A stretch of 64,000 nt of DNA from Epiperipatus broadwayi (lineage: Eukaryota; Animalia; Onychophora), in NCBI GenBank assembly GCA_028023455.1, contig JAQFVV010000009.1:15934001-15998000 (forward strand), read 5' to 3'. Position 1 is the stretch's first letter, and every line of letters begins with the position of its first letter. The position numbers were made by a program, and so were the translations under genes. Below, one piece after another: positions 4,741 to 64,000 of this stretch. A model generated the notes under the pieces. That model did not search any database. It saw nothing but the letters and a program-made list of their open reading frames with translations, and was not told where the DNA came from.

Positions 4741-7700
4741 CTATAAATAAAAACATAAATTGCATAGATAAATATATTATTTTCAGTTTAAAATAAAAAA
4801 TAATCTATCGAATATAAAAGTGATTTAATAAACAATATTATAAATTTTAGTGCATTTGATTGAATTATTTTAATATTATTATATAATATTAGTAATATTC
4901 TGGGAATCAACTGCCAAAGCAATCAATTCAAAAACATAATGGATTTCTAGTAGACTTCAATTCTATAAAACACATGATAAGAAACCAAGATTTGAAGTTT
5001 GATCTATCATATCTTTAAGTTGATTGATTTGGCTGTGAATTCTCTTACCTATACTTACATTGTTTTGTCAACAACCTTTATCATATAAAGCAATGGTATC
5101 AATAAAATCAATTATATAAATATTTTTTGCATATCTGCAATAATACATTCATCTTTGGAATTTAATTATTAAGAGCACATTTAGTTAAAAAATTTATGAC
5201 AAGATATTCTCTTATAAAGTTGACAGATTTTTAAAATCATAAAGTGAAATATTCGAAACAAAAGAAAAGATCAATATTAAACAATGAAATATATATTTTA
5301 AAGCTATAATATTAATGCAGTTTCCTATATTTGGAGATAAACAATAATATTAATTACAAAAAAATAAGATATTTTTTATTACTTAATTCATTATATAAAA
5401 AAAAAACTTTTGATGAATAAGACTGTACTGTATTCTTCTTGTAGATGACCACACAACATTAAGATTAAACCATTATTATTTAACAGAATATAATAAATTT
5501 AACTTCATTTGATAGATATTTTTATTTACAAATGAAGTAAAGTCTAAATAATCATATTTGATTTTTGAACATGTTAAAAAAAATTACATTGTAATCAAAA
5601 CAATAAATGTTTCATTATTGCTGGGAAGAAAATTCTCAGAAAACAAATAAATCTTAGGCATTCCACAAATCAAATTATATTTTAAAAGTAAATTTTTTTT
5701 ATAGGATAGAGTTTTTAAATATTTTCTCTTACTGCACTTATGAATTAAGAGCTTGTTTGAGCTACTGGTATGCTCTCTATATTATATATTTGTAAATATA
5801 AGCTTATAAAAGCAATGTCACATTATGTATGACTTGCTTTATTGATTACTATAACAATTTATATTCTTGATTTTTTAATAATAATTACACAATTATTGTA
5901 CAAAAACTAATTGTGAATTTTAATAAACTGGCAAATCAAGTTTTTTGTTATCCAAACTATTTTCTCCAAGTAATGTAAAAATTGGTAATATCAGAAAGAC
6001 AATAGATACTTATCAAAGCAGAAGCTTAATGTTTTTTATGTTGTTGAATTTTCATTTATCTTTCCATCTTTGGATTTTTTTTGGAATTAAAACTTTAGAA
6101 TAATATATTGTAACAGTATGGAAAATAGGAGTTAATAAGAGAATCTGAGGTTAAAATGTTCCACAATTGGATAGCCATTTGTAACAATACACTACATTAG
6201 GACAGAACTATGAGAAGGAAAACCATCATCATCCCCAAATAAAATATAAATTTAATATAAAAGGAATGAGCATGAGAGCTCAGCACAGAACTAACTATAA
6301 ATTCACCAGCATTACACAAAAGTAATAATCATTTATCATCATGAATGATTAACAATAAATCAGTCAATTTTGTGACTGGATTTGAAGTGGGTTTACTACA
6401 GACCAGGGTAATTATTTAACCACTGCTAAATCTAGGGCAGGAATACACACTATCTGCATGCACATATTTAAGTTCTATTTCATCAAAAAACAAACATAAG
6501 TCAATACTGAGATATCATCAATGCTCTGACCACTTAGCACCATTAATGTACTGGCCAACTATAAAGTAAATTTCTAAAGAAATAAATAAAATGAAATGTA
6601 GTGCATGAACTTTAAAGAATATCTTGCACCAACCAGAATCATCATCATCTGGATGCCCACATCTAGATCAGTAAGCAAGATCTCTATGAACTATTATTGT
6701 CGCAGCAAGAGATAAATAAATAAAGCAGATTATAATCACTTTAAATAATTCCTAGGTTTACCCTACTATAAGTAAATAGTTTTATTGGAATCATTAAAAA
6801 AAATCCTAGAACACTAAGCTGTCATGAAATAAGGTCATATACACTGTAATTTATGAAACAGGAATTGGATAGAATAAAGAAATTAAGACTAAAAAATATA
6901 TTTTTAAAACAATTATTTAATAACTAATTGATAAACAATAAACCAACAAAAAAAATAACATGATAGTATGAAATTTTAAGCATTCATTTCATCCAAAAAA
7001 TTATTTTCATAAAAATTATAATCAGTGGATTTCTATTCATAAATTAACTTTTAATTAATTAAGTGTTGGGAAAACAACATTTTCAAAATCAAAGATAATC
7101 TTTGATTTAGCTTAATTAATCTTTTTTTTTATTTTCAGGAGGGAAAATCAAGAAAAAAAGAGGAAAAACATGTTTCCAAAAAACTAATTTAAATTTATAA
7201 AAAATTAGTTTTTTTTTTTCACAATTTAAAACTATTAATGAAAATATTTAAAATTATCAAAAATTCTTACAAAAACACAAAAAAAATCTTTTTTTTATAT
7301 TATACATGAAAATTTAGTATGCATACATTAAATACCTTTAACCATGATTTGATTCTTCTGTAAGGTTCTTGCCAATTATAATTTCCAGTTATTTTCTTCT
7401 TGAAGACTTCTACACATGTACATGGTCAATTTGTTCTTTTCTTGGTTTGCAGTAATTCCAAATTAAAAAATAGCAAATTTCATTCATTTCTTTCCACTAA
7501 AACTTCCAGGTGAGACTAGTGCAGACAAAGACTTATATGCTCTTGGTTGAAGATAAGATTGCAGATTACTGTAGGTGGTAACTTCCTCTTTACATTTTTA
7601 CTCCAGTGAAGGCAGGGTACATGGAGGAAGATGATGTCTAGATTTTAACTGAATTTAGCACATGATTTTCATTGTACAAACCATTTTTATGATTAAACCC

Positions 7701-9549: not shown

Positions 9550-11430
9550 AACCATTATTGATCTACTGCAGAATGAAGGACTCTCCAAGTTTAATCCATA
9601 TCCGATCTTTAGTCTTTCTTCTCCCCACCACTCCAGCACACTTCCTTATTTCATCCATCCAGCTCACATATAGTCTTTTTCTAGGTCTTTTACAATCTCT
9701 TGGAATCTAGTTTAAGATTTCAACTGTCCATTTATTATCATCCCTTCTAGCAATATGCCCAACTCCAATTCAGTTTCTTAATTCTTTCAATGATGTCAAT
9801 AACAACTGTTTGTTCTCTCACTCATGTTTTTCATTTTTGATCTCTTCTTGTTATTTCTATCATGCATCTCTCCATACTTCCTTGAGTGGTTTGAAGTCTG
9901 TATTGCTCTTCTGTTAAGTGTCCAAGTCTCAGATTCATAAATAAGAACTGGTAAAACACATTTATTAAAAATCTTTTTCAAACACGTAGGCACATTTCCT
10001 TTTAATATTGTTATTTCTACTAAAAGCACTCCAACCAAGTTTAATTCTATGATTAATTTCATCCATTATGTTTGTAGTAATAATTTGATTAAGGTATTTG
10101 TAGTTGGGCATATTTTCTTTTAATATTAACTTATTTCTACCAAAAGCACTCCAAACAAGTTTAATTCTATGATTAATTTCATCCATTATGTTTTCGTCTG
10201 TAGTAATAATTTGACCAAGATATTTGTAGTTGTTAACTTCTTCTAACTCATCATTATCAATCTTTATTTCTATCTTTTAAAAAAATCCACTGAATATTAC
10301 TTTAGTCTTTTTCATATTTATTTTTAATCCTACTTTCTTACTTTCATTGGATAACTCCTGCAACATTTCCTGCCGCTCTAAAGCATTATTTGCAAAAACA
10401 ACTACACCATCAGCAAAATCTAGATGACTTAAATAATATTTATTTACTTTACTCCCTTGGCTTCCATTTTAATCCAAAAAATATTTTTTGCAAAACTGCT
10501 GTAAAAAGTTTTGGAGATATGGAATCACCATATCATACACACATTTCAATGTTAATTTTTTTTAGTTTCATTATATAATCTAATTGTTGCTGTTGCATTT
10601 TTATAAATACTCTTCAGAATATGACATATTCTGGGTCTATAACCTGATGACCTAATACTTTAATTACTGAAAAAATGCTTATAGAATCAAATGCCTTTTC
10701 ATAATCTATAAATCCAAAGCATAATGGCAACTCATATTCATTGGTCCTTTCTATAACTTCTCTCAATACATGGATGTGATCCACTATACTAAAACCACTC
10801 TTAAATCCAGCTTGTTCTTTTGGTTGGTTAAAATCCAAAGTTTGCTGTAGATGACTTGTAATTATTTTAGTAAAAATTTTGTATAGAACTGATAAATCTT
10901 TATCATTTAGACATTTGGTATATAACTTTGCCAACATTTTTTCTATTTCTTCACCTGCTTCTTTTAAGATATTGATTATAAATTCCATCATTACCTGGAG
11001 TTTTTCCCATCTTCATAAATTTAATTGCATGTCTCACTTCTTCATTTAAAATTCTGGGCAATTCGCAAGATGTAATAGATGTAGAAAGTACTTGTTCTTT
11101 ATTACTATATAATTCTTGATAGAAGTCTTCTACCCATTTCATGATGTCATCTCTCTTTTTTAATAATAGTTCCATCTTTTTTTCTTATTACAGAAATAAG
11201 TTTCCTACCAATACCAAGATGTTGTTTTACAATCTTACAACTTTTATCCTCTCCTATAACTTTCCTTGCTAATTTACAGTTATACTTTCTTATATCATTA
11301 TCAACTCTTTTTCACACCACTTTACAAAATTTGAGATATTCAATCCTTCTTCATCATTTTCATACTCCTTCTTTTCCTGTCTCGGAAGAAATTTTACTGG
11401 CCAATTGCTGCTTTTTTTGTATCAGCTACG
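9550..11430 (-). mobile_element. 5'-truncated, decayed RTE-clade LINE (RT domain and 3' end)
   Basis: Minus-strand remnants QPKEQAGFKSGFSIVDHI, FIDYEKAFDS, SHLDFADG, CVLPVLIYESETW and WMDEIRKCAG..KLGESFILQ. Many stops and frameshifts. Contains an internal duplication of about 120 bp at about 10000-10230. Confidence 0.9.
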
Positions 11431-11600: not shown

Positions 11601-12960
11601 CTGTAAAATTTTAAATATAAACAATCATCAAGCCTGTTGATTTGAAAAAATGATGGATATATATATAAGGGAAATCAGAGAAGACAAAAAAATTCTTAAA
11701 ATTTCTAAATCATTACTATATTTTGATTGAAGGTAGATTTTTCTGCCTTTCTTTTCTAAAACAGTATTGGTGTTAAATGTTTGATGTGTATCTTTTTAAA
11801 ATCATTGATTATTTCTTTTTTTACCTATCCATTTTATTATATTAATTTTATGTTAATGCAGTTATTTTGTATTTTTTTTTTAAAACAATAATATTTCCAA
11901 CTTATTTGATTTTTTTTTATTCACACATTTCAAAAATAGTGCATATCTCTTTCATAAATGGCATAGTTCAAACTTAGTCTTTTTCAGCGATTCATACTTT
12001 TTTATTATTAAAAAAAGGTTAAGATGCTGCTATCTTATTCCTTTCCAATTTTTTTCATTTAAAAAACTTTCTAAGTATTTAAAACTATACATTTATTTTA
12101 TTAAATTATTACCTAATTTTTACTTGAAGCTTATTACAATCTTATATTTTTACCGTTCTTTTTTTTTCTTTTCAAATTGCTCTTTTTCTTTATGTATATT
12201 CAATCGAATACTCATTTATCTTTTCTGTGAAGAGATATTAAAAAGATGATAAACAGTATTCCAACTTGCTATTCAAGTCCATATCATCAGACAAATCTTC
12301 TAACCTAAAAGATAACTTTGAATCGTATCTTTCTGACTGTTAACTTGACCAAACATCACTAAATTTATAAAATACATCATTGGTAAATATTGATTTAAAA
12401 TAAAAAGAAAGATAATATCGGCTTAGAGCTTTTTCTCTACATTTTAATTTTTGCTATCAGTTGCAAATTCAAATATCCACACTCATTCATTCATTATTAC
12501 ACACACATATAAAATGTGCATACAAACTTATAACTATAAAAGACTTTTACAAATATGAGCGAAGAATAACTGATGTATTTCACTTTAATAAAATTAAAAA
12601 TTCAATCCTACAATATACTTGTGTGTGCCTGTTTTTTTTTTCTTTCTAAATGAAACAATATATAAAAAAAATGACAAACTTTTTTGAACTCCATTAATTC
12701 TACTGCAAAAGCTTATATATTTATTTATTAATATCGCTTCATTAATCTTTGTTTTATTTCTGAATTATTTTTTTCAGTGACATTATTTGGTTGTTGTCTT
12801 TTTTGAAATTATATTTCTCATAGTATGTGATATAAAGCTCTTGAGGTATAATCTATCATTCACATGACCTAAGATTAAAATCTAGATAGAACTTGAAGAT
12901 TTTCTTAGGTATATTTTATGGTAATATCTCCACACTAAACTCTAATATATTTATTTCTAT

Positions 12961-13002
12961 ACTTAGCACTTTCGAAGGAACGATGCCTTCATTTTCAAAG
13001 CT
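12961..13002 (-). ncRNA. Minimal type-I hammerhead ribozyme-like motif, U3-A8 variant (inverted copy)
   Basis: Minus strand reads AGCU UUGAAAA U GAAGG caucguu CCUUC GAAA GUGCU A AGU. It is on the sense strand of the MCM3AP pre-mRNA. Confidence 0.55.
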
Positions 13003-13127
13003 GTAGATATATTCATAATTATGAGAGCATGAAAATTGGTGCATTTAGTTTAAATTGTAATAGTAATGATGTTGATTAATGTTGAGGAAGAATAATGAAG
13101 TTTTGTGAAATATTGGAATTCTGATCT

Positions 13128-13349
13128 ATTCAAGGCTGGAAGAATTATAAAAACCTGAATACTGGCCAGCTTTCTGCCATCAACCTAGGTCTTCTATTTT
13201 TTGGTTCTCTTGCTCGAATTTTTACTTCCATCCAAGAAACGGGCGATAACTTGTTAATTTTCAGCTATATTATTACTTCAGTGGTCAATGGTATGATATT
13301 TAGACAGATAATTTATTACTGGAACTCGGGTCAGATGAAAAGAGATTAA
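13128..13349 (+). pseudogene. MPDU1: Orphan 3' coding fragment of MPDU1 (mannose-P-dolichol utilization defect 1 / Lec35, PQ-loop family)
   Basis: Uninterrupted 73 codons IQGWKNYKNLNTGQLSAINLGLLFFGSLARIFTSIQETGDNLLIFSYIITSVVNGMIFRQIIYYWNSGQMKRD* carry the MPDU1 signature TGQLSA..GSLARIFTSIQETGD..YW. In-frame TGA at 13122-13124. No start codon, no good acceptor, and no other MPDU1 exons were found in the window. Confidence 0.85.
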
Positions 13350-14000
13350 AAAAACTTGAACACTGTAAAATCAAAGTTAGGAAAAAGTAGCAGAAATTTT
13401 ATTTTATTTTATTTGTATTATTTCTTTTTTTGTCACATATGGCAACAATATTGACGATATCTAATACTATATGACAAACTTTGACAGTATTTATTTTTAA
13501 TTATGATTGATTGGTTTGACTAGCCATAACGGTTGCTCCCTGCTCCCCTTTATTTTTACTTTTTACATATACTTTCTTTATTGTACAAGTGATTGTGTTG
13601 TGTTTTATTTTTTTAAAAGTACGAATGAAGAAAAAAAAAATCAGATTTGTTATGTTTTATTTATTTTAAATTATCAGGTCTAAAATATTTTTTGTATTCA
13701 TACATATATGTGCCACACATTCTGCAATATATATATATTTCTTGCTATCTTATCGTTAATAATATTTATATGAAGCAAGTAAAATTGATTTACATATGTA
13801 TATATTATAAAAAATAGCCTTATGTAAATAATAGCCATCTGAAATTCTAGCAACCTCTAGATAATTTTTGTGGGTAGATGAGATTTTTTTAAGTAATCTT
13901 ATATATATATTTTAAAAAAAAATAGCTATCTTAATTAATTATCTGACTATTAGTCAGTAAATAGAATCTAGCTATTGTTGTATTTTTAGGAGCTATCTAC

Positions 14001-14042
14001 AGCTTTGAAAATGAAGGCATCGTTCCTTCGAAAGCGCTAAGT
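14001..14042 (+). ncRNA. Minimal type-I hammerhead ribozyme-like motif, U3-A8 variant
   Basis: AGCU UUGAAAA U GAAGG caucguu CCUUC GAAA GCGCU A^AGU: 5-bp stem II, palindromic stem III AGCGCU, CUA triplet and a 3-bp stem I (GCU/AGU). Confidence 0.6.
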
Positions 14043-15718
14043 ATAGAAATAAATATATTAAGAGTTTAGTGTGGAGATATTACCATAAAATATCTGATTA
14101 TTACATATATAAACCACACATTTAATTATTTAATAGTTAGGTATATTCCATGTTTTTTTCCTCTCTTTCCCTTCATCCATTAATTGCACTGCAGTCAGTG
14201 TTTCCTTTTAGATGTTTGTTATCCAAAATATAGCTCTTACACCCCAAAGCAGATTACAACCATTATTACTAATAATTATCTCTCTTTAAAATCATCAATC
14301 AACTTATTATATCCTAATTTTCTCACAATCTCTTCCAACGTACGCTTCATAATCACCTCAGTTTAAAATACAAATGCAATCATTTTTCTCCAACTCCTTC
14401 TCTTTCATAATATTTTTTTTATTTATATTTACTCGTAATTTACAATATTTATACACTGCAAATCTTATCTTTCCATTATTCTCAAAATTTATATTTCTAA
14501 ACCTTTCAGTCTTTTTTTCTTTATCTAATTATGTCTACTCCATCTAATGCTACAATCCAAAATAACTCAACATATTTCTTTAAATCTAATTTTAATAGAT
14601 TACAAAATAATAATCCATCCATTTTAAAATCATATTCAGGCATTGCTATTTCCACTTCAGTTTCTTTATTATTATCTATTTTATCAAACATTTAAAAGTA
14701 TTATTTTATAACTTTCTATGGCCAAGGATTATACTTGATATTGTCATCTCTCTATTTACTTGCATTTATTTTCATTCCAAATTATCTGACAATTCTATCA
14801 CTCCTACAAAAGATTTATTATGTTTATTTTTATCTACAAATCACAGCCATATTCTGTGCTAATTCCATTCAGTATCAAAATTTGTTTCATAATTCATCTT
14901 TATATAGCTTATTATTATGCAAAAAGGTATCAAATCTTACAAATATCTTAATTCATATATCCAACTTGCAATTTACACCCCCCAATGCCAAACAAACTAT
15001 TTAATTCACAATGTCAAATATTTATTCAAAATCAGTAAAATATTAGCCTTCCCTTCTCTATTTCTCAATAATAGTTATCATTCCAATTGCATTACTTGCC
15101 CATCTACTATTTATAAATTGACGCTCCTTTTCATTAAAAATATATCTAATCTATAAAAATCTCATCCATTCAAAACTCATAATACCTTATTAGCTCTACA
15201 CAGATTATTAGATTTTTACATAGAATAAATTAAAGCATGCATATACACTAAAATTATGATAATCTATATAAAAGATATTAAACATTAAAAATTGTAAGAA
15301 GGAGTGGCGAATTGAAATTATATAATAAATTATCGCTTACACTATAAATATTTAAACTTAAATAAAAAACAAAAGAAGCCTATTTCCACTTTCTAAATTC
15401 ATTAAATTCCATTATCACTAAACATTCCCCACCTTGCTCCCTTTCAAAAGTTTTTATGTGGATATATTTCAATTTTATCACCATATATTTGCCGGTAGAA
15501 ATAATTTATTTAAATAATTGTAAATGTCTAGATTCTGTTTTTAATTTGGCCACTATTTGCCTGTTCTGTATATTACTTTACACTTCAGTGCTTTTTATTT
15601 CTAATTGCTAAGTCTTCCTTGGAATATAAATAACAATACTGTAATGTCTTTATAGTATAAGAAAAATTATTTATGATACATAACGTCAATAAAAAAAATA
15701 CTGAAAACAACACGATAT

Positions 15719-18090: not shown

Positions 18091-21000
18091 CTACCCAAAA
18101 TGCATTTCTGCCTTGACTCCGCACAATGGTGAAAGGCCTTCATATAGATTGTAGAATTTCTTGCATATGAATTTTCCTGGTTCACTCATGTGGGGAGTTT
18201 TTACTAATACTCGGTCCCCTACTTTGAAGTAACGATGTGTCACCTGGGTTTTCTTATTCCGCCGTTTGCTTGCTCTAATTTTTTGGTAAGCTAACATGCA
18301 ATTAGCCTCTGGTCTATTGGTCTGTCTTCAGTCCCTGGCAAAACCGTTTTCATCAACCAAGGAACATGTTGTCCTAAGTGCAACTACCCTGGCGCAAAAC
18401 CCATGGACTTGTTAATGGATCAATTAACGTAATTTAAAACTTGTGGCAGACACTTGACCCAACCACGATGATTGTCAGGTGTGTATATCCTGAATAGCCA
18501 TCCCAGTTCCCGCATTATTTGTTCGCATGGGTTTGACAGGATTTCGAATGGATGTCAATATATGTCTTATGTCATGTTTATGGATCAACTTTTCCCATTC
18601 TTTTGAAGTGAATGGGTACCATGGTCAGACAGGAGGATTTTAGGTTTCCCTGCTGCAGGGAAATGATTATTTTCAAGGATCCTGATTGTCCTTTGACATT
18701 AGCCTGGGCCACAGGGTACACCGCTACAAATTTAGAGAAAAGATCATATACCTCCACCAAGTATTGTTTCCGGTTAAATGGAGGGGGGGGAGGGGGTCAT
18801 AATAGTCCATGGCCATCACTTCCTAAGGTTTGTCCGGTATCACAGAGATCATGGGTGTAGCATAATTTCAGTTCGCGGGTTTAGCCCTCTGGCATATCGC
18901 ATATTTATTCAGGATATTAATGATACTACTATGCATACCTGGCCAATAAACCACTTTCCAATTAGATGTTCTATTTTCAGGGTACCATACTGTTCATACA
19001 GTTTATGAATGTGGTTTACCACTGCTTCCCTCAAATGGCTTGGAAGGAAAGACCTCCATTCTTTGGGGTCATCTCGAACCTTGAAGTATTTTTTTCTTCT
19101 TAACCGATAATTGTCCCTTTTATTTCCCACCCAATCTATATCGATGGGCTCCTTTGATTTTAACAGGGCTACTAACAGTGCCAGTTTCTTATCCCTTCTT
19201 TGATGGTGGGCCAACTGGCCTAGATCTTTCATCTGTATAAGTTGTCACATTTTAAATGCTGAGGATGGTATCTGGCAGGATTATAACTCAAAAAATATTT
19301 GCTACTATATTCTCCGATCCTTTGCAGTGGCACACAGTATAATCATACTCCTGGGGAAATAAACTCCAATGCATAGCTAATGAACTCTAGGCTCTTGTGA
19401 TCAGTGATTACGATTACTTTTGACCCCAGTAAGAATGGTGTAAATTTCTGGAATGCTTATATGATGGCTAAAGCCTCCTTTTCGATGGTAGTGTCATTCA
19501 TTTCCAGGCTTTGAGTAATCGGCTTATAAAATACAGCACTCCTATCTGGCCATCATCCTTGCTTTGTGACAAAGTTGCCCTGATCCCATAACCACTACTA
19601 TCGTCTGGACCAAAAAAGGTTTGTTGAAATTGGGGAATGGAGAGTATCACTTGTTTCAAAAATTCCTCTAATCTCTTCAAATGCTTGGGTCTGCTCTCCT
19701 GACTATTTCCATGGCACATGATTCCTTAATAATTTTCAATAATGATTCTGCTTTCTCCACCAATCGCTCCTGGAATCAGTTATAAAAATTGCAGAGGCCT
19801 AAAAAGGCGCGTATGTTTCCTTGACTGAGATGTGGTCAAATCCCCTGGGCCCCTATCACATGCCTCAAAAAATACTACATCTCTATATAGAGTACTTTTT
19901 CTCAAAAATTCCTCTTTTTTGGCATTCTCCCAGGAAAATGTCTACCTCTCTGAGATGGTCTTTCATAGTGGATGATGCTATTAGAACCATCATCCATATG
20001 CATGGTTACCAATCTTTGACTTCCTGTGATAGTACTTGCTCAAGGCACCTTAACAACTCTGCTCCAGTTTATAAGGCCAAATCACATTTTATTAAATTGG
20101 TATGAATAGCCCTTGAACCTAAAGGTGGTGTACTGACGATCTTCAGGGTGTAATGCTATACACCAGTAGCAGGCCATTAATTCAAATATGATTTTCTTTC
20201 CATTGAATTTAACCAATAGTTCCTGCGAGGGTGGAGCTACATTGCAATCTGGTACCGTTATTTTATTTAGTTGTCTGGCATCCAGGTATAACCGAAGAGC
20301 TCCAATCCTTCTTTACCACCACAAGAGGGTTGCAATATGGTGTCAAGCATTTTGAAACTATTCCCCATTCCATCATCTGGTCAATTTGGTTTTTTACTTC
20401 CCCTTTGTACTGATGCGGTATGGAGTACGATCTTGATTGAAAGGGTTGAGTCTGGCTTAACCTAATCCTTTGCTCAAACCTTTGAATCGTGCTGGGGACA
20501 TCAGAGAAAACCTGATTATGTTTCATTAACATTCCTTCCAGCCTTGATTCCCCCAGATCCTCCACCATTTCTCTAATAATGCTTTCAATTGGCTCCTCCT
20601 TGATTTTCAGCCTCCGATAGACCCGTACAATAAGTTTGTTATAAATTCTAACTCCTTGTTTTCATATATCAACTGTCCTTTCTTGTAACCGGGGCTGCAT
20701 TTATGCCTGTGTAAGAAATCAGATCCCAGTAGTGCATCATGTATCAGATCTTTCTGGTTAAAAGTATATGTGAAATGGCCTTTCTCATTGATCTTTATTT
20801 CAACCCACACTTGTCGGGGCTCTATCTTTGCGTTATGATTATTTGCCATAGTGACATGGGTTGCTTTTAGTGGAAGAGTTTGTATCCTTGGCTGTTCCCT
20901 TAATATTTGTTGGTATAACTTCTCTGATATTACAGAAACCTGGCTTCCTGAATCTATAAGTGTTGCTATCCTAAGGTCCCCGAATCCAACAATGATCTTC

Positions 21001-21719
21001 AGGCAAGTTTGTGGGGCATATTCTGGGACTCTCTTCCCATGAGCGTATGAGTTTCCCCACTTGTCCCCCTTTCTCTGCAGAGATTGAGTTGCACTGTTTT
21101 CTTTATCCGTTTTCCTTTTCTCGTTCTCTTCCTTATGTTCATACATTTGCATTTCATCTATTTTTCTAAATTCCCTACATTCTAAGCTACGCCAATAATT
21201 GTTCAATTCGAACATACCCAACACTTTGTCTATCCCAGTAGCTGATTTATTCACTCTTCCCAACATGCATTTCATCACCTCACCAAAATTCCTACACACT
21301 ATCCCTACTATTTGTTTCTCTGACATTTTGCATGCTTCCAAGCTCCTCAATATAGCCACCTGTCATCTGAAAAATTATGCAGTTTTCTGGGCCATGCTCT
21401 CAATACCTTTGCCCCATTATCTGCCATTTAATCCTTGTTGACCTTCTAACCAAAAAGTCTTCTCTGTTGTTTTGTATCACCAAAACTTTGGGTGACTAGA
21501 TAGTGAGTTCCACCATGTAAGGGCATGCCCCTCTAAGTGGTTGTAGGCTACCATGACTTTACTCTTTTCGGACATTTTATTTACCCTAAAATATCTTCTT
21601 AAACTTTCCATATGTCCTACTGGTATTTCCCCCACTTCGCCCTTGAATATTTTTTTTATTTTTATTAGTTCTTGGGTCATGGTTTCTTGTTCCATATTAC
21701 CCTGTGATTTGGTTTTCAT
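18091..21719 (-). pseudogene. Disrupted Gypsy gag-pol
   Basis: Gag (AYNHLEGHALTWWNS), protease (TLIDSGSQVSVIS), RT start (EWGIVSKCLTPYCNPLVVVKK), RNase H (DDSSGYGIRATLSQ..YFISRLL), integrase (VYDLFSKFVAVYPV; FKVGDRVLVK). Multiple frameshifts and stops. Confidence 0.92.
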
Positions 21720-33115: not shown

Positions 33116-33322
33116 TACAATAATCAAATATGTTTAAAAATACATATATACAAGCAACAAAGATTACAAATTATAAAATTATTATATAAAAGCCTTTTTC
33201 GGCAAATTATGTTTTTTTGCCCTTTTCAATATGTCTCCACGATTTAAAGCACATAATAATTTTATAATTTGTAATCTTTGTTGCTTGTATATATGTATTT
33301 TTAAACATATTTGACTATTGTA
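33116..33322 (-). mobile_element. Short PLE-terminus-like insertion with inverted arms (33116-33186 and 33253-33322)
   Basis: Near-perfect 70-bp inverted repeat. A hammerhead-like motif lies immediately 5' of the left arm on the minus strand. Confidence 0.6.
33184..33232 (-). ncRNA. Minimal type-I hammerhead ribozyme-like motif, U3-A8 variant (second family)
   Basis: Minus strand reads AUA UUGAAAA G GGCAAA aaaacauaa UUUGCC GAAA AAGGCUUUU A^UAU: 6-bp stem II, near-palindromic stem III, UUA triplet and a 3-bp stem I. Confidence 0.6.
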
Positions 33323-42380: not shown

Positions 42381-42504
42381 CTCCAATGGAATTATTTGAA
42401 AATTCTGCTACCGGCCATGACAAAGAGTTCAATTCATCATTGGTAATCACACTATAGATATGTATAATAATGGAATTATACAAGTCTATTAATATTGATG
42501 GATT
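42381..42504 (-). CDS. MCM3AP: MCM3AP/GANP internal exon (124 nt, phase 0/1)
   Basis: gactttAG|...|GTaaat. Encodes NPSILIDLYNSIIIHIYSVITNDELNSLSWPVAEFSNNSIG, matching GANP [35 protein letters not shown]. Confidence 0.92.
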
Positions 42505-45500
42505 CTAAAGTCAAAAATTATATAATATTTGAATGAATTTCTTTTCAAATATAAATTAAATCATTGTTATAAAATGGAAATAATTATATGATCCATTACA
42601 TTATCTTTTTTTTCATCTAAATAAATAAATAACACTTAAATAAGTTATTCAACAATAAATATTATATAGCTACTCCTTGATTCATTGGACATGCATATAT
42701 TGCTTTATAGTATCCATCATCTTCTTTCTCTGGTCAAAATTCAATCAAAAATATATATATTAAAAAAAACAAGGATCCATCATTTTTCAAATTGTGTTTT
42801 TTTTGCTTCTACCATTGATAAAATTACTGGTCCCATATAATATTTATTTGCAAAAATATTTTTTTAAGAAACTGAATCAACATTTCTATTTTATTAAAAT
42901 AACAATAATCCAATCTTTTTTTCCTCCTTTAAATTTATATAATTCTAAAGCTCAATTAACTGTTTCTTTTATATCTTTTTTTGACTTTAGAAAATATTTA
43001 TCACCTCAACCTTTTCTCTTTTTCTATAATTTTAAAAAGCTATATATATATATTTAGTACCACAGCTTTCTATTAAAAGTCATTTATTTTGCTTGCAACA
43101 TTCTAAATGAGGAAATAAACTTAGTAAATAAATTTCAATTTACTTTTTTTTTTTTACTTTTTATAAATTAATGATTATATACAATTAGTATTAATTTCAT
43201 TTTTTTAAACATAAGTAATAATTATTTTTAAAGTTATATATATATATAGTCTGCTTATATTATAAAGAATATCTCAAAAACACTTTAAGGAGGTTCAAGG
43301 TTGATTGTTTCCTCTGGAAAGATATGGGAGAGAATGGAATATATTGGACAGTTAGTTAAAGGATTTCAGAAAAAAATGTTTTCTGCTGAAAAGATTAAAA
43401 GACAATATTGCAAAATAACAATTAAACAGAAAAATGGACTACCATATTCTTATGTGAACATATTTGCGTTTTACAGATGGGTTTTGTATAATCATTGCAA
43501 AAACTTATCTCTAGAGCATTTTTTTTTTTTTTCTATTTCTTTTTCTTTGAGTTAGAATGGCAATAATCATTTATATATGCTGTTCTTTATATATTTACAT
43601 ACACACATTTTTTTTTCAAATAATATGCAGAATGTTTGGATTATAATTTCTGAATTATATTTAAGTTAATGGTTAAGTTATACTGTATTGTATTTCACTG
43701 AATAATAATTAAAGGGCCCCTTACATGTCTTTATTTTCTCTGATGTCGTAAAAAATAATGGTTCAAGATTTTATTGTAGTATTTCCATTATATAATGCTT
43801 TGCTATTCTCTTCAATGTGAATATATGAATGTATATACCATTATATACAATAGACATTACATATAATAATATTTATACTTTGCTTTTTGAATTATATATA
43901 TTTTTAAACACAATACTGATTATACAGTAAACAAAAACATAAATAATATTATTTAAGCATTGACGTAAATACATTTGAATGTTGAAAGCAATACATTTTT
44001 TAAAAAAAATATTATTTTGACTATATAATATTATTATGGATTTATTTGGATATAAATATACATATATATAAATAATGGAAATTATACCCACGTAATCACT
44101 CTTCCTTTGATATTGCTAGGAAACTATCAATTACTAATTGACTGTCATAAGGCTAAACAAATGTTTTCTAATACTCTATTATGTCCTAAGATTAAATATT
44201 AAGAAATAATGAATATGTGTAAGAAAATAAATACCCATGCATACACAAAATATTATTGAGATCTTATACACATGTGCACATAATATATGATTTTCCCTTC
44301 AAGTTTAAATGACAAATCATTAGTTAATTGTATAAATATAATTATATTTAATGTATAATAAAAGTCTATAAGACCAATGTAATTATTCTGATATACTTTT
44401 CTTCTGTTAAAATCAAGAGTTAATCATTTTTTTGATTATCTCTTTTATCATTTATATTAAATATTAAACATTTGATACTAATTTATAATTTTTTTCTGTG
44501 ATTTGCTTTATTATGTTTTTTTTTTTTTTTTTACTTCTTTCTTCTAAATTTGGTATCTGTAATGATTCATATCATACATTTCACAATTAATTTTGTAGAC
44601 GATACCACTTTTATTTTTTATTTCACTTTTTATTTTAGAATTAGATAGAAGTGTTATTTTTGGTGAAAATTACTCTTTAATAACAAAAATAAAACTATAA
44701 TAAATATTAATATAAATGACATTTAACTTAAAAATATCAGGTATAACAGTATTAAACATGATAATAGCATTTTTTCTTCAAATAAGAATAAAAAATAAAA
44801 ATTATATGATAAAATTATACTAAATAGTCAAATAAGTAAGAAACTAAAAATATTAATATCTAATTCTAAAATAAAAGGTGGAAAAAAACTATCTATAAAA
44901 TTAATTGTGGAATATATGATAATGGTATATTATGGATGTTGAATAATTAACAGAAAAGATGGTAAACCAGAACCATACCATTTAACATATGTTTATAGAA
45001 TAATAAAAAAATATTAAATTTTTATACTATATTGATAAATCTAATAAAAAAAAAAGTTTATGAAAAAAAAAGTATGAATATATATGACCCAACTATGCAA
45101 TTAATTGCATGTTTGGTCAATTAATTTCCATAGTATTCTGCATATGTATAGATAAGCACTTTTATATGTAAATAAATCCACTTTAATAAATAACTAATAA
45201 AAGTAAAATATAATGAAAAAAAAATCATTACTTTTAATTTTACTATGTAAATACATTTACAATTGCTTTTGTTTATTATATATTATTTTAAAAAAATTAT
45301 AATTTTTAAAAAAATTAAATGTCATTATATGTAAATAGGTTCTTGTATATTCACACTGATGATGATAATAAAAAATTATTAAGAAGTATTTTTGTATTGA
45401 AAAACTGACAGTGAACAAACTGCTGCACCCACAGCATCATTGTCCACTGATTTACTTAACTACAATTTTTTTTAAAAAAAACCTTAATAAAAAAAATAGA

Positions 45501-61072: not shown

Positions 61073-61196
61073 CTATATAAAAATAAATATTTTTCTTATG
61101 AGAAGGTGGATATTTTTTCCAATCATAACTACAGGGATATACAAAAATTTTCATGTTGATCACTGTTTGAAAAATTAGGAAATTACATAAATTTAC

Positions 61197-61418
61197 CTGG
61201 TGTGAGCTATTGCTGTCCAGTATGCAAGACATAAAATCAATTTGTACATTATCTATAAGTTCAGAATGGAGTAATTCAGTGAGTTGCAAATGTGTGATAA
61301 TTTCTTCTTCACTAAAAACTCTTTCCCCAAAAATGACAATCATCAAAGGTAAAGGAGGGCGAAGAGGCTTTGCAGTGACTAGTTGGAATAATCGAAGACG
61401 ATTTTCTAACCACCAGTT
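61197..61418 (-). CDS. MCM3AP: MCM3AP/GANP internal exon (222 nt, phase 0/0); upstream exons lie beyond the window
   Basis: tttatttcAG|...cag|GTaaat. Encodes NWWLENRLRLFQLVTAKPLRPPLPLMIVIFGERVFSEEEIITHLQLTELLHSELID..., matching GANP [36 protein letters not shown]. Confidence 0.92.
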
Positions 61419-62074: not shown

Positions 62075-63050
62075 AATCATCATTTTCAACCAATATTAAT
62101 ATACTTTATGATGAAGGCCTTTAAGTTAAATCCAGTTACTTCAATCCTAGCTTCCTTTATTCACAACACATCAATATACTTTCTTATTTCACCTATGCAT
62201 CTCACATGTGGTCTCTTTCTAGATCTTTTAAAATCTTTTTAAGATCCAATTTTGTCCATCTATTATAATCTTTTCTAGCAATTTATGTAGTCCAGCTCAT
62301 TTCAATCTTTTGTTTCAATGATGACAATGATACTTGTTTGCTCTCTTATTAATGTATTTCATTTTCAATTTTACTTCTAACATATATCTCTCCACACTTA
62401 AAAATCTCTGTATTGTTCTTCTGTTAAGTGTCACTGGTACAATAAATCTACTAAAATCTTTCTTTTCAAACACATAGGCATATTTCCTTTTAATATTAAA
62501 TTATTTTACCAAAAGCACTCCATCCAAGTTTAATTTTATAATTAATTTCATCTACTAAGTTTTCATCTGTATTAATAATGTGATAACTTCTCTCAATTCA
62601 TGATTATCACTCTTTAGTTTCATTTTGTAAGAAAATTCATAGAATATTATTTTAGTCTTTTTAATATTTATCTTTAATCCTACTTTCCTACTTTCATCTG
62701 ATAACTCCTGCAACATTTCCTGTAACTCTAAAGCATTATTTGAAACAACTACATCATCTGCAAAATCTAAATGACTTATATTTATTTGTATCCCCTTAGT
62801 TTCCCATTTTAACCTACAAAATTCTTCTTGTAAAACTGCTACAAAAAGTTTTGGAAATATAAAGACACCCTGTCTCATACATTCTTCTTATTGTTTTTTT
62901 AGTATCACCATGTAAACTAATCATTATTGTAATATTTTGATAAATATCTTCAAAATATGACAATATCCTGAGTTTATATCTTGATGATCCAATGCTTTAA
63001 TCATGATAGAGATGATTATAGAATCGAATACCTTTTCACAATCTACAAAT
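62075..63050 (-). mobile_element. RTE LINE 3' fragment (decayed)
   Basis: MRQGVFIFPKLF, SHLDFADDVVV, LQELSDESRKVGLKINIKKTK. Same family as 9550-11430. Confidence 0.88.
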
Positions 63051-63614: not shown

Positions 63615-64000
63615 ATCATCATCACAAACCTTCAGGAAAACATCAAATCTAAATGTATTTTGTTATAAAGTTACTTTATTTGGACAGATATATCTTCAAT
63701 AGCACTAACCCATATAAGTAATCATATTTACACATACTCACACATACATTATATATATATACTTAAAACAAAATAAAATGTCCGCTAATATTAATAATAC
63801 AATAACGAAACTTAAATATATTCCAAACAACGGTAAACAATTTATAATATAGTATAAATCAAAACTCATAAAGAAATATTTTCGATTATATTCATAATCA
63901 TTATCAACTCAACTTTCAAAATGGAATCAACTATTACCAACCGGAAACACATGTCGATTTAAATATCCCACAATTCATTAATCCTAATATTTGCTGATTG

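What the first reader, a model, noticed from the sequence alone, without database searches (positions are those of the whole stretch)
12911..14093. Host-gene (MPDU1) fragment packaged between inverted, ribozyme-bearing Penelope-like termini
Seen: an intact 73-codon MPDU1 C-terminal ORF plus downstream sequence sits antisense in an MCM3AP intron. It is flanked by two nearly identical inverted arms of about 100 bp, each containing a hammerhead motif. It has no start codon, no good splice acceptor and no partner exons in the window. Known: PLEs carry minimal hammerheads in their pseudo-LTRs and often insert with an inverted copy of the 3' end; host-sequence capture is described for some PLEs but is rarely documented for short non-autonomous units. 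Inference: a chimeric MPDU1-PLE RNA (read-through or template switch) was recently retrotransposed, making this a ribozyme-ended, Pack-like gene-fragment shuttle.
Basis: partly seen in the sequence, partly recalled or inferred. Interest (0 to 1): 0.85.

Follow-up and report, generated by a model that had tools for sequence, protein, structure and literature searches.

The report
Penelope retroelement captured spliced MPDU1 fragment
While inserting into a host intron, a Penelope-like retrotransposon also copied part of a spliced MPDU1 messenger RNA, leaving a dead gene fragment between two inverted element ends; this kind of accident is known but rarely documented for this element class.

Summary
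Arms 12911-13009 and 13994-14093 are 99% complementary and enclose a 74-codon MPDU1 C-terminal ORF.

The arms are not transposon TIRs. They are the last ~100 nt of a high-copy, 2.5-kb Penelope-like element (PLE) with an RT and a GIY-YIG-like C-terminus. The family shows 5' truncation, tandem pseudo-LTRs, head-to-head inverted copies and a 32-47-nt 'tail'.

The real unit is 12905-14147. It is bounded by an 11-bp target-site duplication (TTAGGTATATT), and its right end carries the 33-nt tail.

The cargo comes from RNA. Segment B (13125-13980) begins exactly at the first base of the last coding exon of the parental MPDU1 gene on another contig. It is joined to a 115-nt non-coding piece that lies 63 kb upstream in the same parental intron.

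Best reading: one PLE insertion in which the RT switched from PLE RNA to a spliced MPDU1 transcript, and the second DNA strand primed the inverted arm.

The cargo is single-copy and evolves neutrally (5 of 6 exon changes alter the protein). It is a dead-on-arrival chimeric retrocopy, not a 'shuttle'.

The 'hammerhead' is Rfam-negative but fits the published PLE minimal hammerhead with a U3-A8 core. Earlier scan notes on this genome already flag that core. None describes another cargo-bearing insertion.

The parts
12905..12915 (.). Left target-site duplication TTAGGTATATT. Its last 5 nt (ATATT, 12911-12915) are also the first 5 nt of the inverted arm, so they are a priming microhomology.
   Evidence: Direct reading. 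The sequence is identical to 14137-14147. Family TSDs of 11-14 bp were found in six other copies.
12911..13009 (-). Inverted, 5'-truncated copy of the PLE 3' end (unit positions 2490 to 2392 of the reference copy L046:5283-7782). It lacks the last 10 nt of the unit and the tail.
12964..12998 (-). Hammerhead-like motif of the left arm (U3-A8 core). Loop 3 is mutated to GUGC and is no longer palindromic.
   Evidence: and reading.
13010..13123 (+). Cargo segment A: non-coding. It is 92% identical to G000:C12393:22143041-22143155 (minus strand), which lies 63 kb upstream of the parental last exon inside the same intron. Putative cryptic or alternative exon. In the parent it is followed by G|GCAAG.
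13124..13124 (+). Junction base A. The parent has G on either side of the removed intron.
13125..13349 (+). Cargo segment B, part 1: the complete last coding exon of MPDU1 (74 codons plus TAA). It starts at the first base after the parental acceptor ...TTTTACAG|. It shows 6 substitutions against the parent, 5 of them amino-acid changes.
13350..13980 (+). Cargo segment B, part 2: MPDU1 3' UTR. Homology to the parent ends 19-29 nt after an AGTAAA hexamer (13956-13961). There is no poly(A).
   Evidence: A contig of the parental version is present in the possible-RNA run X8.
13981..14103 (+). Direct-orientation PLE 3' end (unit 2388-2500 from 13990). Bases 13981-13989 are of uncertain origin, with TTAG microhomology.
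14005..14039 (+). Minimal hammerhead-like motif: UUGAAAA-U-GAAGG(7-nt loop)CCUUC-GAAA-GCGC-U-A.
   Evidence: 0 hits in 100 shuffles. The variant is described in PMC4209133. Rfam is negative.
14104..14136 (+). PLE 'tail': the first 33 nt of the next tandem unit (5' UTR). It is present at this end only.
   Evidence: The concept is from PMC8557442 and PMC11167929.
14137..14147 (.). Right target-site duplication TTAGGTATATT.

Best explanation
This is one target-primed insertion by an endonuclease-containing Penelope-like element.

Shown:
- The arms are the 3' end of a 2.5-kb PLE family.
- The composite is bounded by an 11-bp TSD.
- The right end carries the PLE tail.
- The cargo is an intron-less join of two pieces of a distant MPDU1 gene.

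Inferred sequence of events:
1. On the bottom strand, the RT started inside PLE RNA, in the tail region of a tandem transcript.
2. It copied about 33 + 113 nt of PLE RNA, then switched template to an MPDU1 transcript near its 3' end.
3. It copied the 3' UTR and the last coding exon, then crossed a splice junction into a 115-nt upstream non-coding exon.
4. The top-strand nick, 11 bp away, annealed through ATATT to PLE RNA 10 nt from the unit's end. It was extended for 99 nt, which made the inverted arm.
5. The two cDNAs were joined at an ATA microhomology.

The product is a single-copy, promoterless, neutrally evolving gene fragment.
For: PLE identity:
- Fixed outer end and variable inner ends in 29 copies.
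- Full unit L046:5283-7782, with an RVT_1 hit.
- An end-to-end alignment to an RT-plus-GIY-YIG protein, including VYKIxC..C.xYxGxTK...TRL.xH.
- An upstream partial tandem copy.
- Ten cargo-less head-to-head pairs with tails of 26-47 nt.

Single event: TSD 12905-15 = 14137-47. Family TSDs are 11-14 bp.

RNA origin:
- Segment B starts at exon base 1.
- The acceptor is validated by the upstream exon ...VVAK|gtatgt and by the homolog junction K|MIQ.
- Segment A lies 63 kb upstream, on the same strand and in the same intron.

No PLE piece lies within 1.5 kb of either parental segment.

Junctions are seen in independent contigs: X1 covers 13916-14019 and X5 covers 12985-13135, both with 0 differences.

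Mechanistic precedent: a purified PLE protein cleaves and extends both strands and initiates internally (PMC11167929).
Against: - There is no poly(A) between the 3' UTR and the PLE, so a switch onto a mature mRNA end is not shown.
- Segment A has no RNA evidence as an exon.
- Its donor would be GC rather than GT, and junction base 13124 (A) differs from the parental G.
- The arms differ by 1% but cargo and parent by 4.6% (Poisson P about 0.05). This needs arm-arm gene conversion or a divergent source allele.
- Pfam does not hit GIY-YIG directly in this family.
- No empty-site allele was found.
Confidence: 0.8

Rival explanations
1. A read-through chimeric transcript. A 5'-truncated PLE copy once sat just after the parental MPDU1 3' UTR. 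The MPDU1-PLE read-through RNA ended in a PLE 3' end and was retrotransposed in cis-like fashion, with no template switch.
For: The cargo is in sense orientation directly upstream of a sense PLE 3' end. There is no poly(A) at the junction. In A. vaga, sequences framed by PLE repeats are mobilised in trans (PMC3846280).
Against: No PLE fragment lies within 1.5 kb of the parental 3' UTR or of segment A in this assembly. The junction lies 19-29 nt after an AGTAAA hexamer, where a cleaved mRNA would end.
Confidence: 0.12
2. A DNA-level origin. Either a DNA transposon with 100-bp TIRs captured a gene fragment (Pack-MULE-like), or two independent PLE insertions flank a segmental duplication.
For: Near-perfect inverted arms and a TSD are also what a TIR element would show.
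Against: The arms are the 3' UTR of an RT-encoding element with 5'-truncated copies. The ends are asymmetric, with the tail and last 10 nt present only on the right. The cargo lacks a 63-kb intron exactly at the splice acceptor. One TSD brackets the whole composite.
Confidence: 0.02
3. A real nested gene or exon: the ORF is a functional MPDU1-like exon used by a transcript in this locus.
For: The 74-codon frame is still open, and exon identity to the parent is 97.3%.
Against: No upstream MPDU1 exons lie on this contig. There is an in-frame stop upstream and no acceptor. Five of 6 substitutions are non-synonymous, including T to N in the conserved SAIT. The possible-RNA run X8 holds only the parental version.
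Confidence: 0.03
4. An assembly artefact: a chimeric join at repeated PLE arms.
For: PLE inverted or tandem structures are known to confuse assemblies (PMC8557442).
Against: Contigs from other runs cross the left arm/segment A/segment B junctions and the segment B/right arm junction without differences. The matching TSD argues for a real insertion.
Confidence: 0.02

Closest known systems
Penelope-mediated mobilisation of host sequences in the rotifer Adineta vaga (Pen3a-NRPS; Arkhipova, Yushenova & Rodriguez 2013, PMC3846280)
   Same: Host sequence lies between PLE terminal repeats, including an inverted one, and is bounded by a short TSD (8 bp there, 11 bp here). It is interpreted as the action of PLE enzymes on non-PLE RNA.
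   Different: There, whole genes are framed by complete pseudo-LTRs and keep all their introns. Here the ends are only about 100-146 nt of the 3' end, the cargo is a partial transcript, and a 63-kb intron has been removed.
LINE-generated chimeric retrocopies by RT template switching (U6-L1 and similar; tripartite chimeras in Magnaporthe, PMC2104539; U6 pseudogenes, PMC4476161)
   Same: A TE 3' end is fused in sense to a copy of a cellular RNA, with one TSD around the chimera and intron loss. The titles and abstracts are; the mechanism is from my own knowledge.
   Different: The RT class is different (PLE with GIY-YIG, not an APE or REL LINE). There is no poly(A). There is an added inverted arm and a PLE-specific tail.
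L1 'twin priming' inversions (Ostertag & Kazazian 2001; from my own knowledge, not checked here)
   Same: The second nicked strand primes on the element RNA by short microhomology, which gives an inverted 3'-end segment at the 5' side of the insertion.
   Different: In PLEs, head-to-head structures are the norm for the family: 10 of 29 sampled copies. A purified PLE protein extends both strands (PMC11167929).
Minimal hammerheads of metazoan PLEs, U3-A8 covariant core (Cercyon of Schistosoma mansoni; Cervera & de la Pena 2014, PMC4209133)
   Same: [quoted passage not shown] It lies in the PLE terminal repeat region.
   Different: Activity has not been tested. Rfam models do not score it. The single-sequence fold is not better than shuffles.
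Pack-MULE or Pack-type gene-fragment carriers
   Same: A gene fragment lies between inverted ends and a TSD.
   Different: Those are DNA transposons that amplify as units. Here the ends are retroelement cDNA, the cargo is spliced, and the unit is single-copy.

Membership tests
Penelope-like element (EN+), for the arms' family | Reverse transcriptase ORF | tested here: met
   RVT_1 E=7.6e-7, 29.5 bits against a cut-off of 29.6. A group II maturase RT is the best PDB sequence hit. Homologs carry PF00078. PLE-clade phylogeny was not done.
Penelope-like element (EN+), for the arms' family | C-terminal GIY-YIG endonuclease after the RT | tested here: inconclusive
   There is no direct Pfam or NCBIfam hit. 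The ORF does align over 96% of its length to P0151, whose C-terminus scores GIY-YIG at E=2e-4, and it shares VYKIxC..C.xYxGxTK..TRL.xH...GH...DN...E. The AlphaFold model was too poor to use, with pLDDT 46.
Penelope-like element (EN+), for the arms' family | Partial tandem copies forming pseudo-LTRs; strong 5' truncation | tested here: met
   L046 has a partial upstream copy abutting a full 2.5-kb unit. Inner ends vary across 29 copies.
Penelope-like element (EN+), for the arms' family | Adjacent inverted 5'-truncated copy; 30-40-bp 'tail' at one end | tested here: met
   Ten head-to-head pairs have tails of 26-47 nt. The window copy has a 33-nt tail on the right only. The criteria are from PMC8557442.
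Penelope-like element (EN+), for the arms' family | Hammerhead motif in the terminal repeat | tested here: inconclusive
   Only the U3-A8 variant minimal motif is present. Rfam is negative.
Hammerhead ribozyme (type I, minimal PLE form) | Catalytic core CUGANGA...GAAA...UH with helix II | tested here: not met
   No canonical CUGANGA descriptor hit occurs anywhere in the window. The arm reads UUGAAAA.
Hammerhead ribozyme (type I, minimal PLE form) | Published covariant core U3-A8, with the extra nucleotide 9/10.1, G10.1-C11.1 and a palindromic loop 3 | tested here: met
   The right arm at 14005-14039 fits, with 0 hits in 100 dinucleotide shuffles. The left arm fails on loop 3. The descriptor features are from PMC4209133.
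Hammerhead ribozyme (type I, minimal PLE form) | Self-cleavage | not testable with these tools
   This needs an in vitro assay. Published minimal PLE hammerheads cleave poorly, and only as dimers or with protein.
Chimeric or processed retrocopy made by template switching | Intron loss at an exact splice junction | tested here: met
Chimeric or processed retrocopy made by template switching | Single TSD around the chimera | tested here: met
   An 11-bp TSD.
Chimeric or processed retrocopy made by template switching | Poly(A) tail of the captured mRNA | tested here: not met
   No A-run lies at 13981-13993.
Pack-type mobile gene-fragment carrier ('shuttle') | Ends belong to a DNA transposon; the unit is found in several copies | tested here: not met
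   The ends are PLE cDNA. The cargo occurs only in the parent and here.
pLTR-framed trans-mobilised host gene (A. vaga type) | Complete pseudo-LTRs on both sides; introns retained | tested here: not met
   The arms are 99 and about 146 nt of the 3' end only, and an intron is removed.

The most novel reading that the evidence does not exclude
PLE reverse transcriptases may switch onto spliced cellular RNAs often enough to be a regular source of processed or chimeric retrocopies in PLE-rich invertebrate genomes. That would run against the view that PLEs disperse intron-containing copies. In such inserts, the variant U3-A8 hammerheads left at both ends (one per strand) could cut transcripts of the insert or of the host intron.
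Probability: 0.12. Interest if true: 0.6.

Novelty: new member of a known kind. Interest (0 to 1): 0.35.

Why it matters
This is a clean, junction-resolved example of a PLE integration that carried host RNA. Four features are readable in one locus:
- the TSD;
- the one-sided tail;
- microhomology at the top-strand priming site;
- an exact splice junction in the cargo.

It fits the in vitro finding that a PLE protein extends both DNA strands and starts inside its RNA. It adds that the enzyme can copy a spliced cellular transcript. This bears on how retrocopies should be counted in PLE-rich genomes. For the host, the outcome is a pseudogene fragment and a 99-bp inverted repeat inside a likely GANP intron.

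Tried and rejected
- Rfam, E-value mode, on the window region, on 8 family loci and on the full unit: no hammerhead.
- Single-strand fold of the right arm: z = -0.53, no better than shuffles.
- Pfam and NCBIfam on the endonuclease region: no GIY-YIG hit.
- AlphaFold model of the endonuclease region: pLDDT 46, too poor, so no fold search was run.
- Empty-site search: both flanks are single-copy in the assembly, and no joint 12915 to 14148 appears in reads.
- Expression: the possible-RNA run X8 holds only the parental 3' UTR. The type of run X5 is unknown, so nothing can be said about expression of the copy.
- PLE pieces near the parental segments: none.
- DNA-transposon, nested-gene and 'shuttle' readings: rejected, as set out under the rival explanations.
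- Literature searches for PLE template switching or retrocopies: they found only the A. vaga cases.
A natural copy (L046) served as the reference.
Full report
**What is at the coordinates.** The two arms, 12911-13009 and 13994-14093, are 99-100% complementary, with one transition and one 1-nt indel in 99 nt. Between them, 13125-13346 is an open 74-codon frame ending in TAA at 13347-13349. It hits Pfam PQ-loop. It aligns with the C-termini of about 250-aa proteins that their sources name mannose-P-dolichol utilization defect 1. Rfam reports no hammerhead in 12500-14500, even at E<=10.

**What the arms are.** The 99-nt arm is a high-copy repeat, with at least 849 first-look candidates. In 29 fetched copies the outer end is fixed and the inner end varies from 99 to more than 1000 nt. 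That is the 5'-truncation pattern of a retroelement. In sense orientation the arm is therefore the reverse complement of an element's 3' end.

Walking inward leads to a coding region. A natural full unit lies at L046:5283-7782 (2.5 kb). Its ORFs at 5320-6261 and 6183-7565 overlap in different frames.
- The second ORF hits RVT_1 (E=7.6e-7).
- It aligns over 96% of its length with P0151, a protein that has RVT_1 followed by a borderline GIY-YIG hit. The alignment includes VYKIxC..C.xYxGxTK..TRL.xH.
- Pfam does not score GIY-YIG directly in this family, so that feature rests on alignment and motifs.

In L046 a partial upstream copy abuts the full unit. This shows that ATATATAAACCACACATTTAATTATTTAATAG is the unit's 5' end. 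The same 26-47 nt follow the 3' end of many dispersed copies as a 'tail'. Ten of the 29 sampled copies are head-to-head pairs of 5'-truncated 3' ends with nothing between them.

All of this matches the published description of EN+ Penelope-like elements: pseudo-LTRs, an adjacent inverted 5'-truncated copy and a one-sided 30-40-bp tail (PMC8557442).

**True boundaries.** The right arm continues outward through the last 10 nt of the unit and a 33-nt tail, to 14136. The next 11 nt, TTAGGTATATT (14137-14147), repeat 12905-12915 exactly. Six other family copies have TSDs of 11-14 bp. The last 5 nt of the left TSD (ATATT) are also the first 5 nt of the inverted arm, which begins at unit position 2490 rather than 2500. 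So arm, cargo, arm and tail went in as one event.

**What the cargo is.** The genome holds only one other copy of the cargo, on contig C12393.

Segment B (13125-13980) matches C12393:22079302-22080223 on the minus strand. It has 38 substitutions in 851 aligned nt (K2P 0.046) and seven indel events. The homology starts at the first base after the parental ...TTTTTTACAG|.

That this is the true acceptor follows from the previous coding exon, at C12393:22814918-22815142. It ends ...NIPIVVVAK|gtatgt. The homolog P0002 reads ...NIPVVFCGK|MIQALSNY across the same point.

In the window the exon is preceded not by intron or by the penultimate exon but by segment A (13010-13123). Segment A is 92% identical to C12393:22143041-22143155, on the same strand and 63 kb upstream within that intron. 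In the parent, segment A is followed by G|GCAAG, a GC-type donor context. The junction base 13124 is A where the parent has G.

A join that removes 63 kb and lands exactly on an acceptor is best explained by splicing. The template was therefore an RNA, probably a minor isoform with a cryptic or alternative exon. This last point is inferred, because no RNA evidence for segment A was obtained.

Parental homology ends 19-29 nt after an AGTAAA hexamer, which is compatible with an mRNA 3' end. There is no poly(A), however. Neither parental segment has PLE sequence within 1.5 kb.

**Mechanism.**

Shown:
- PLE ends;
- a one-sided tail;
- a TSD;
- microhomologies at 12911-12915 (ATATT) and at 13007-13011 (ATA);
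- an intron-less cargo in sense with the right-hand PLE end.

Inferred:
- bottom-strand TPRT began internally in a tandem PLE transcript and copied about 146 nt;
- the RT then switched to the MPDU1 RNA and ran to the 5' end of segment A;
- the top-strand nick primed on PLE RNA and produced the 99-nt inverted arm;
- the two cDNAs were then joined.

This fits the only biochemical study of a PLE, in which the purified protein cleaves and extends both strands, prefers AT-rich ...ATT sites and initiates inside the RNA, so producing the tail (PMC11167929). The rival is a read-through MPDU1-PLE RNA from a lost or polymorphic PLE copy. I give it about 0.12.

**Fate.** The cargo is single-copy.
- Five of the 6 exon substitutions change the protein, including T to N in the otherwise conserved SAIT.
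- An in-frame stop lies upstream.
- No partner exons exist on this contig.
- The possible-RNA run X8 holds only the parental 3' UTR.

It is a dead-on-arrival fragment, not a shuttle. By analogy with the anole PLE, which needs the first 172 nt of its ORF in the RNA, this unit would also lack the sequence needed for re-mobilisation. That last point is inference.

**Junction support.** An X1 contig covers 13916-14019 without differences. An X5 contig, labelled as another organism, covers 12985-13135 without differences, and so crosses the arm/segment A and segment A/segment B joints. No empty-site allele was seen.

**Hammerhead.** An earlier scan note (s1-086546) pointed to a U3-A8 core.
- The right arm reads UUGAAAA-U-GAAGG-CAUCGUU-CCUUC-GAAA-GCGC-U-A (14005-14039).
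- A descriptor built on those features found this site and one more, at 63874-63907 on the minus strand, against none in 100 shuffles. The canonical core gave no hit.
- The left arm's copy has GUGC in loop 3.
- The fold energy is unremarkable, and activity is untested.

'Ribozyme-bearing' is therefore plausible but unproven.

**Host context.** MCM3AP_GANP-domain exons lie collinearly on the minus strand at window 61191-61415 and 42391-42510, and further upstream. SAC3_GANP exons lie at C9:16.07-16.09 Mb. Profile positions 381-715 were not located. The insertion is probably in a downstream intron and antisense to the gene, but this was not shown.

**Unexplained.** The arms differ by 1% while cargo and parent differ by 4.6%. 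Gene conversion between the arms, or a divergent source allele, could account for this.

**Novelty.** Capture of host sequence between PLE repeats with a TSD is published for Adineta vaga, where introns are retained (PMC3846280). Template-switch chimeras are well known for LINEs. This case is a further example, and its distinguishing point is a spliced cargo in a PLE context.

Noticed in passing
window 63874-63907 (-) and 33116-33322: A second site fits the same U3-A8 minimal-hammerhead descriptor (63874-63907, minus strand). At 33116-33322, an unrelated short inverted-repeat element has UUGAAAA-G-GGC...GCC-GAAA on its minus strand; an earlier scan note also flags it.
   Followed up: partly
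PLE unit positions ~2386-2394 (L008, L018, L019, L023 and both window arms: 13009 and 13990): Seven of the roughly 40 truncation points sampled in this family fall within 9 nt, just 5' of the hammerhead-like hairpin. This may be a preferred stop or switch point of the RT. It does not coincide with the predicted ribozyme cut site (unit ~2437).
   Followed up: partly
G000:C12393:22080002-22815142 (L041, L043): The last two coding exons of the parental MPDU1 gene appear to lie about 735 kb apart on the same strand. This is either a very large last intron or an assembly or paralog issue.
   Followed up: no
L033:1189-2063 and L034:1408-2286: The parental segment A lies in a patch of old, 70-80% similar inverted repeats that is also present on another contig. 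The putative cryptic exon may be repeat-derived.
   Followed up: partly
window 10614-10991 (-), 62555-62878 (-), 20607-21359 (-): Other retroelement remnants lie in the window: two RVT_1 fragments and an ORF with a weak, sub-threshold retroviral-type aspartyl-protease hit.
   Followed up: no
G000:C21:11129334-11130200 (+): An intron-less, open 343-aa frame covers the whole SAC3_GANP domain (270 bits). It is either a separate SAC3-family gene or a retrocopy.
   Followed up: no
window 12985-13135, run X5: A 151-nt contig identical to the left arm/segment A/segment B junctions occurs in a small run labelled as a different organism (B). The insertion is either shared with a close relative or the label differs from the source.
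   Followed up: no
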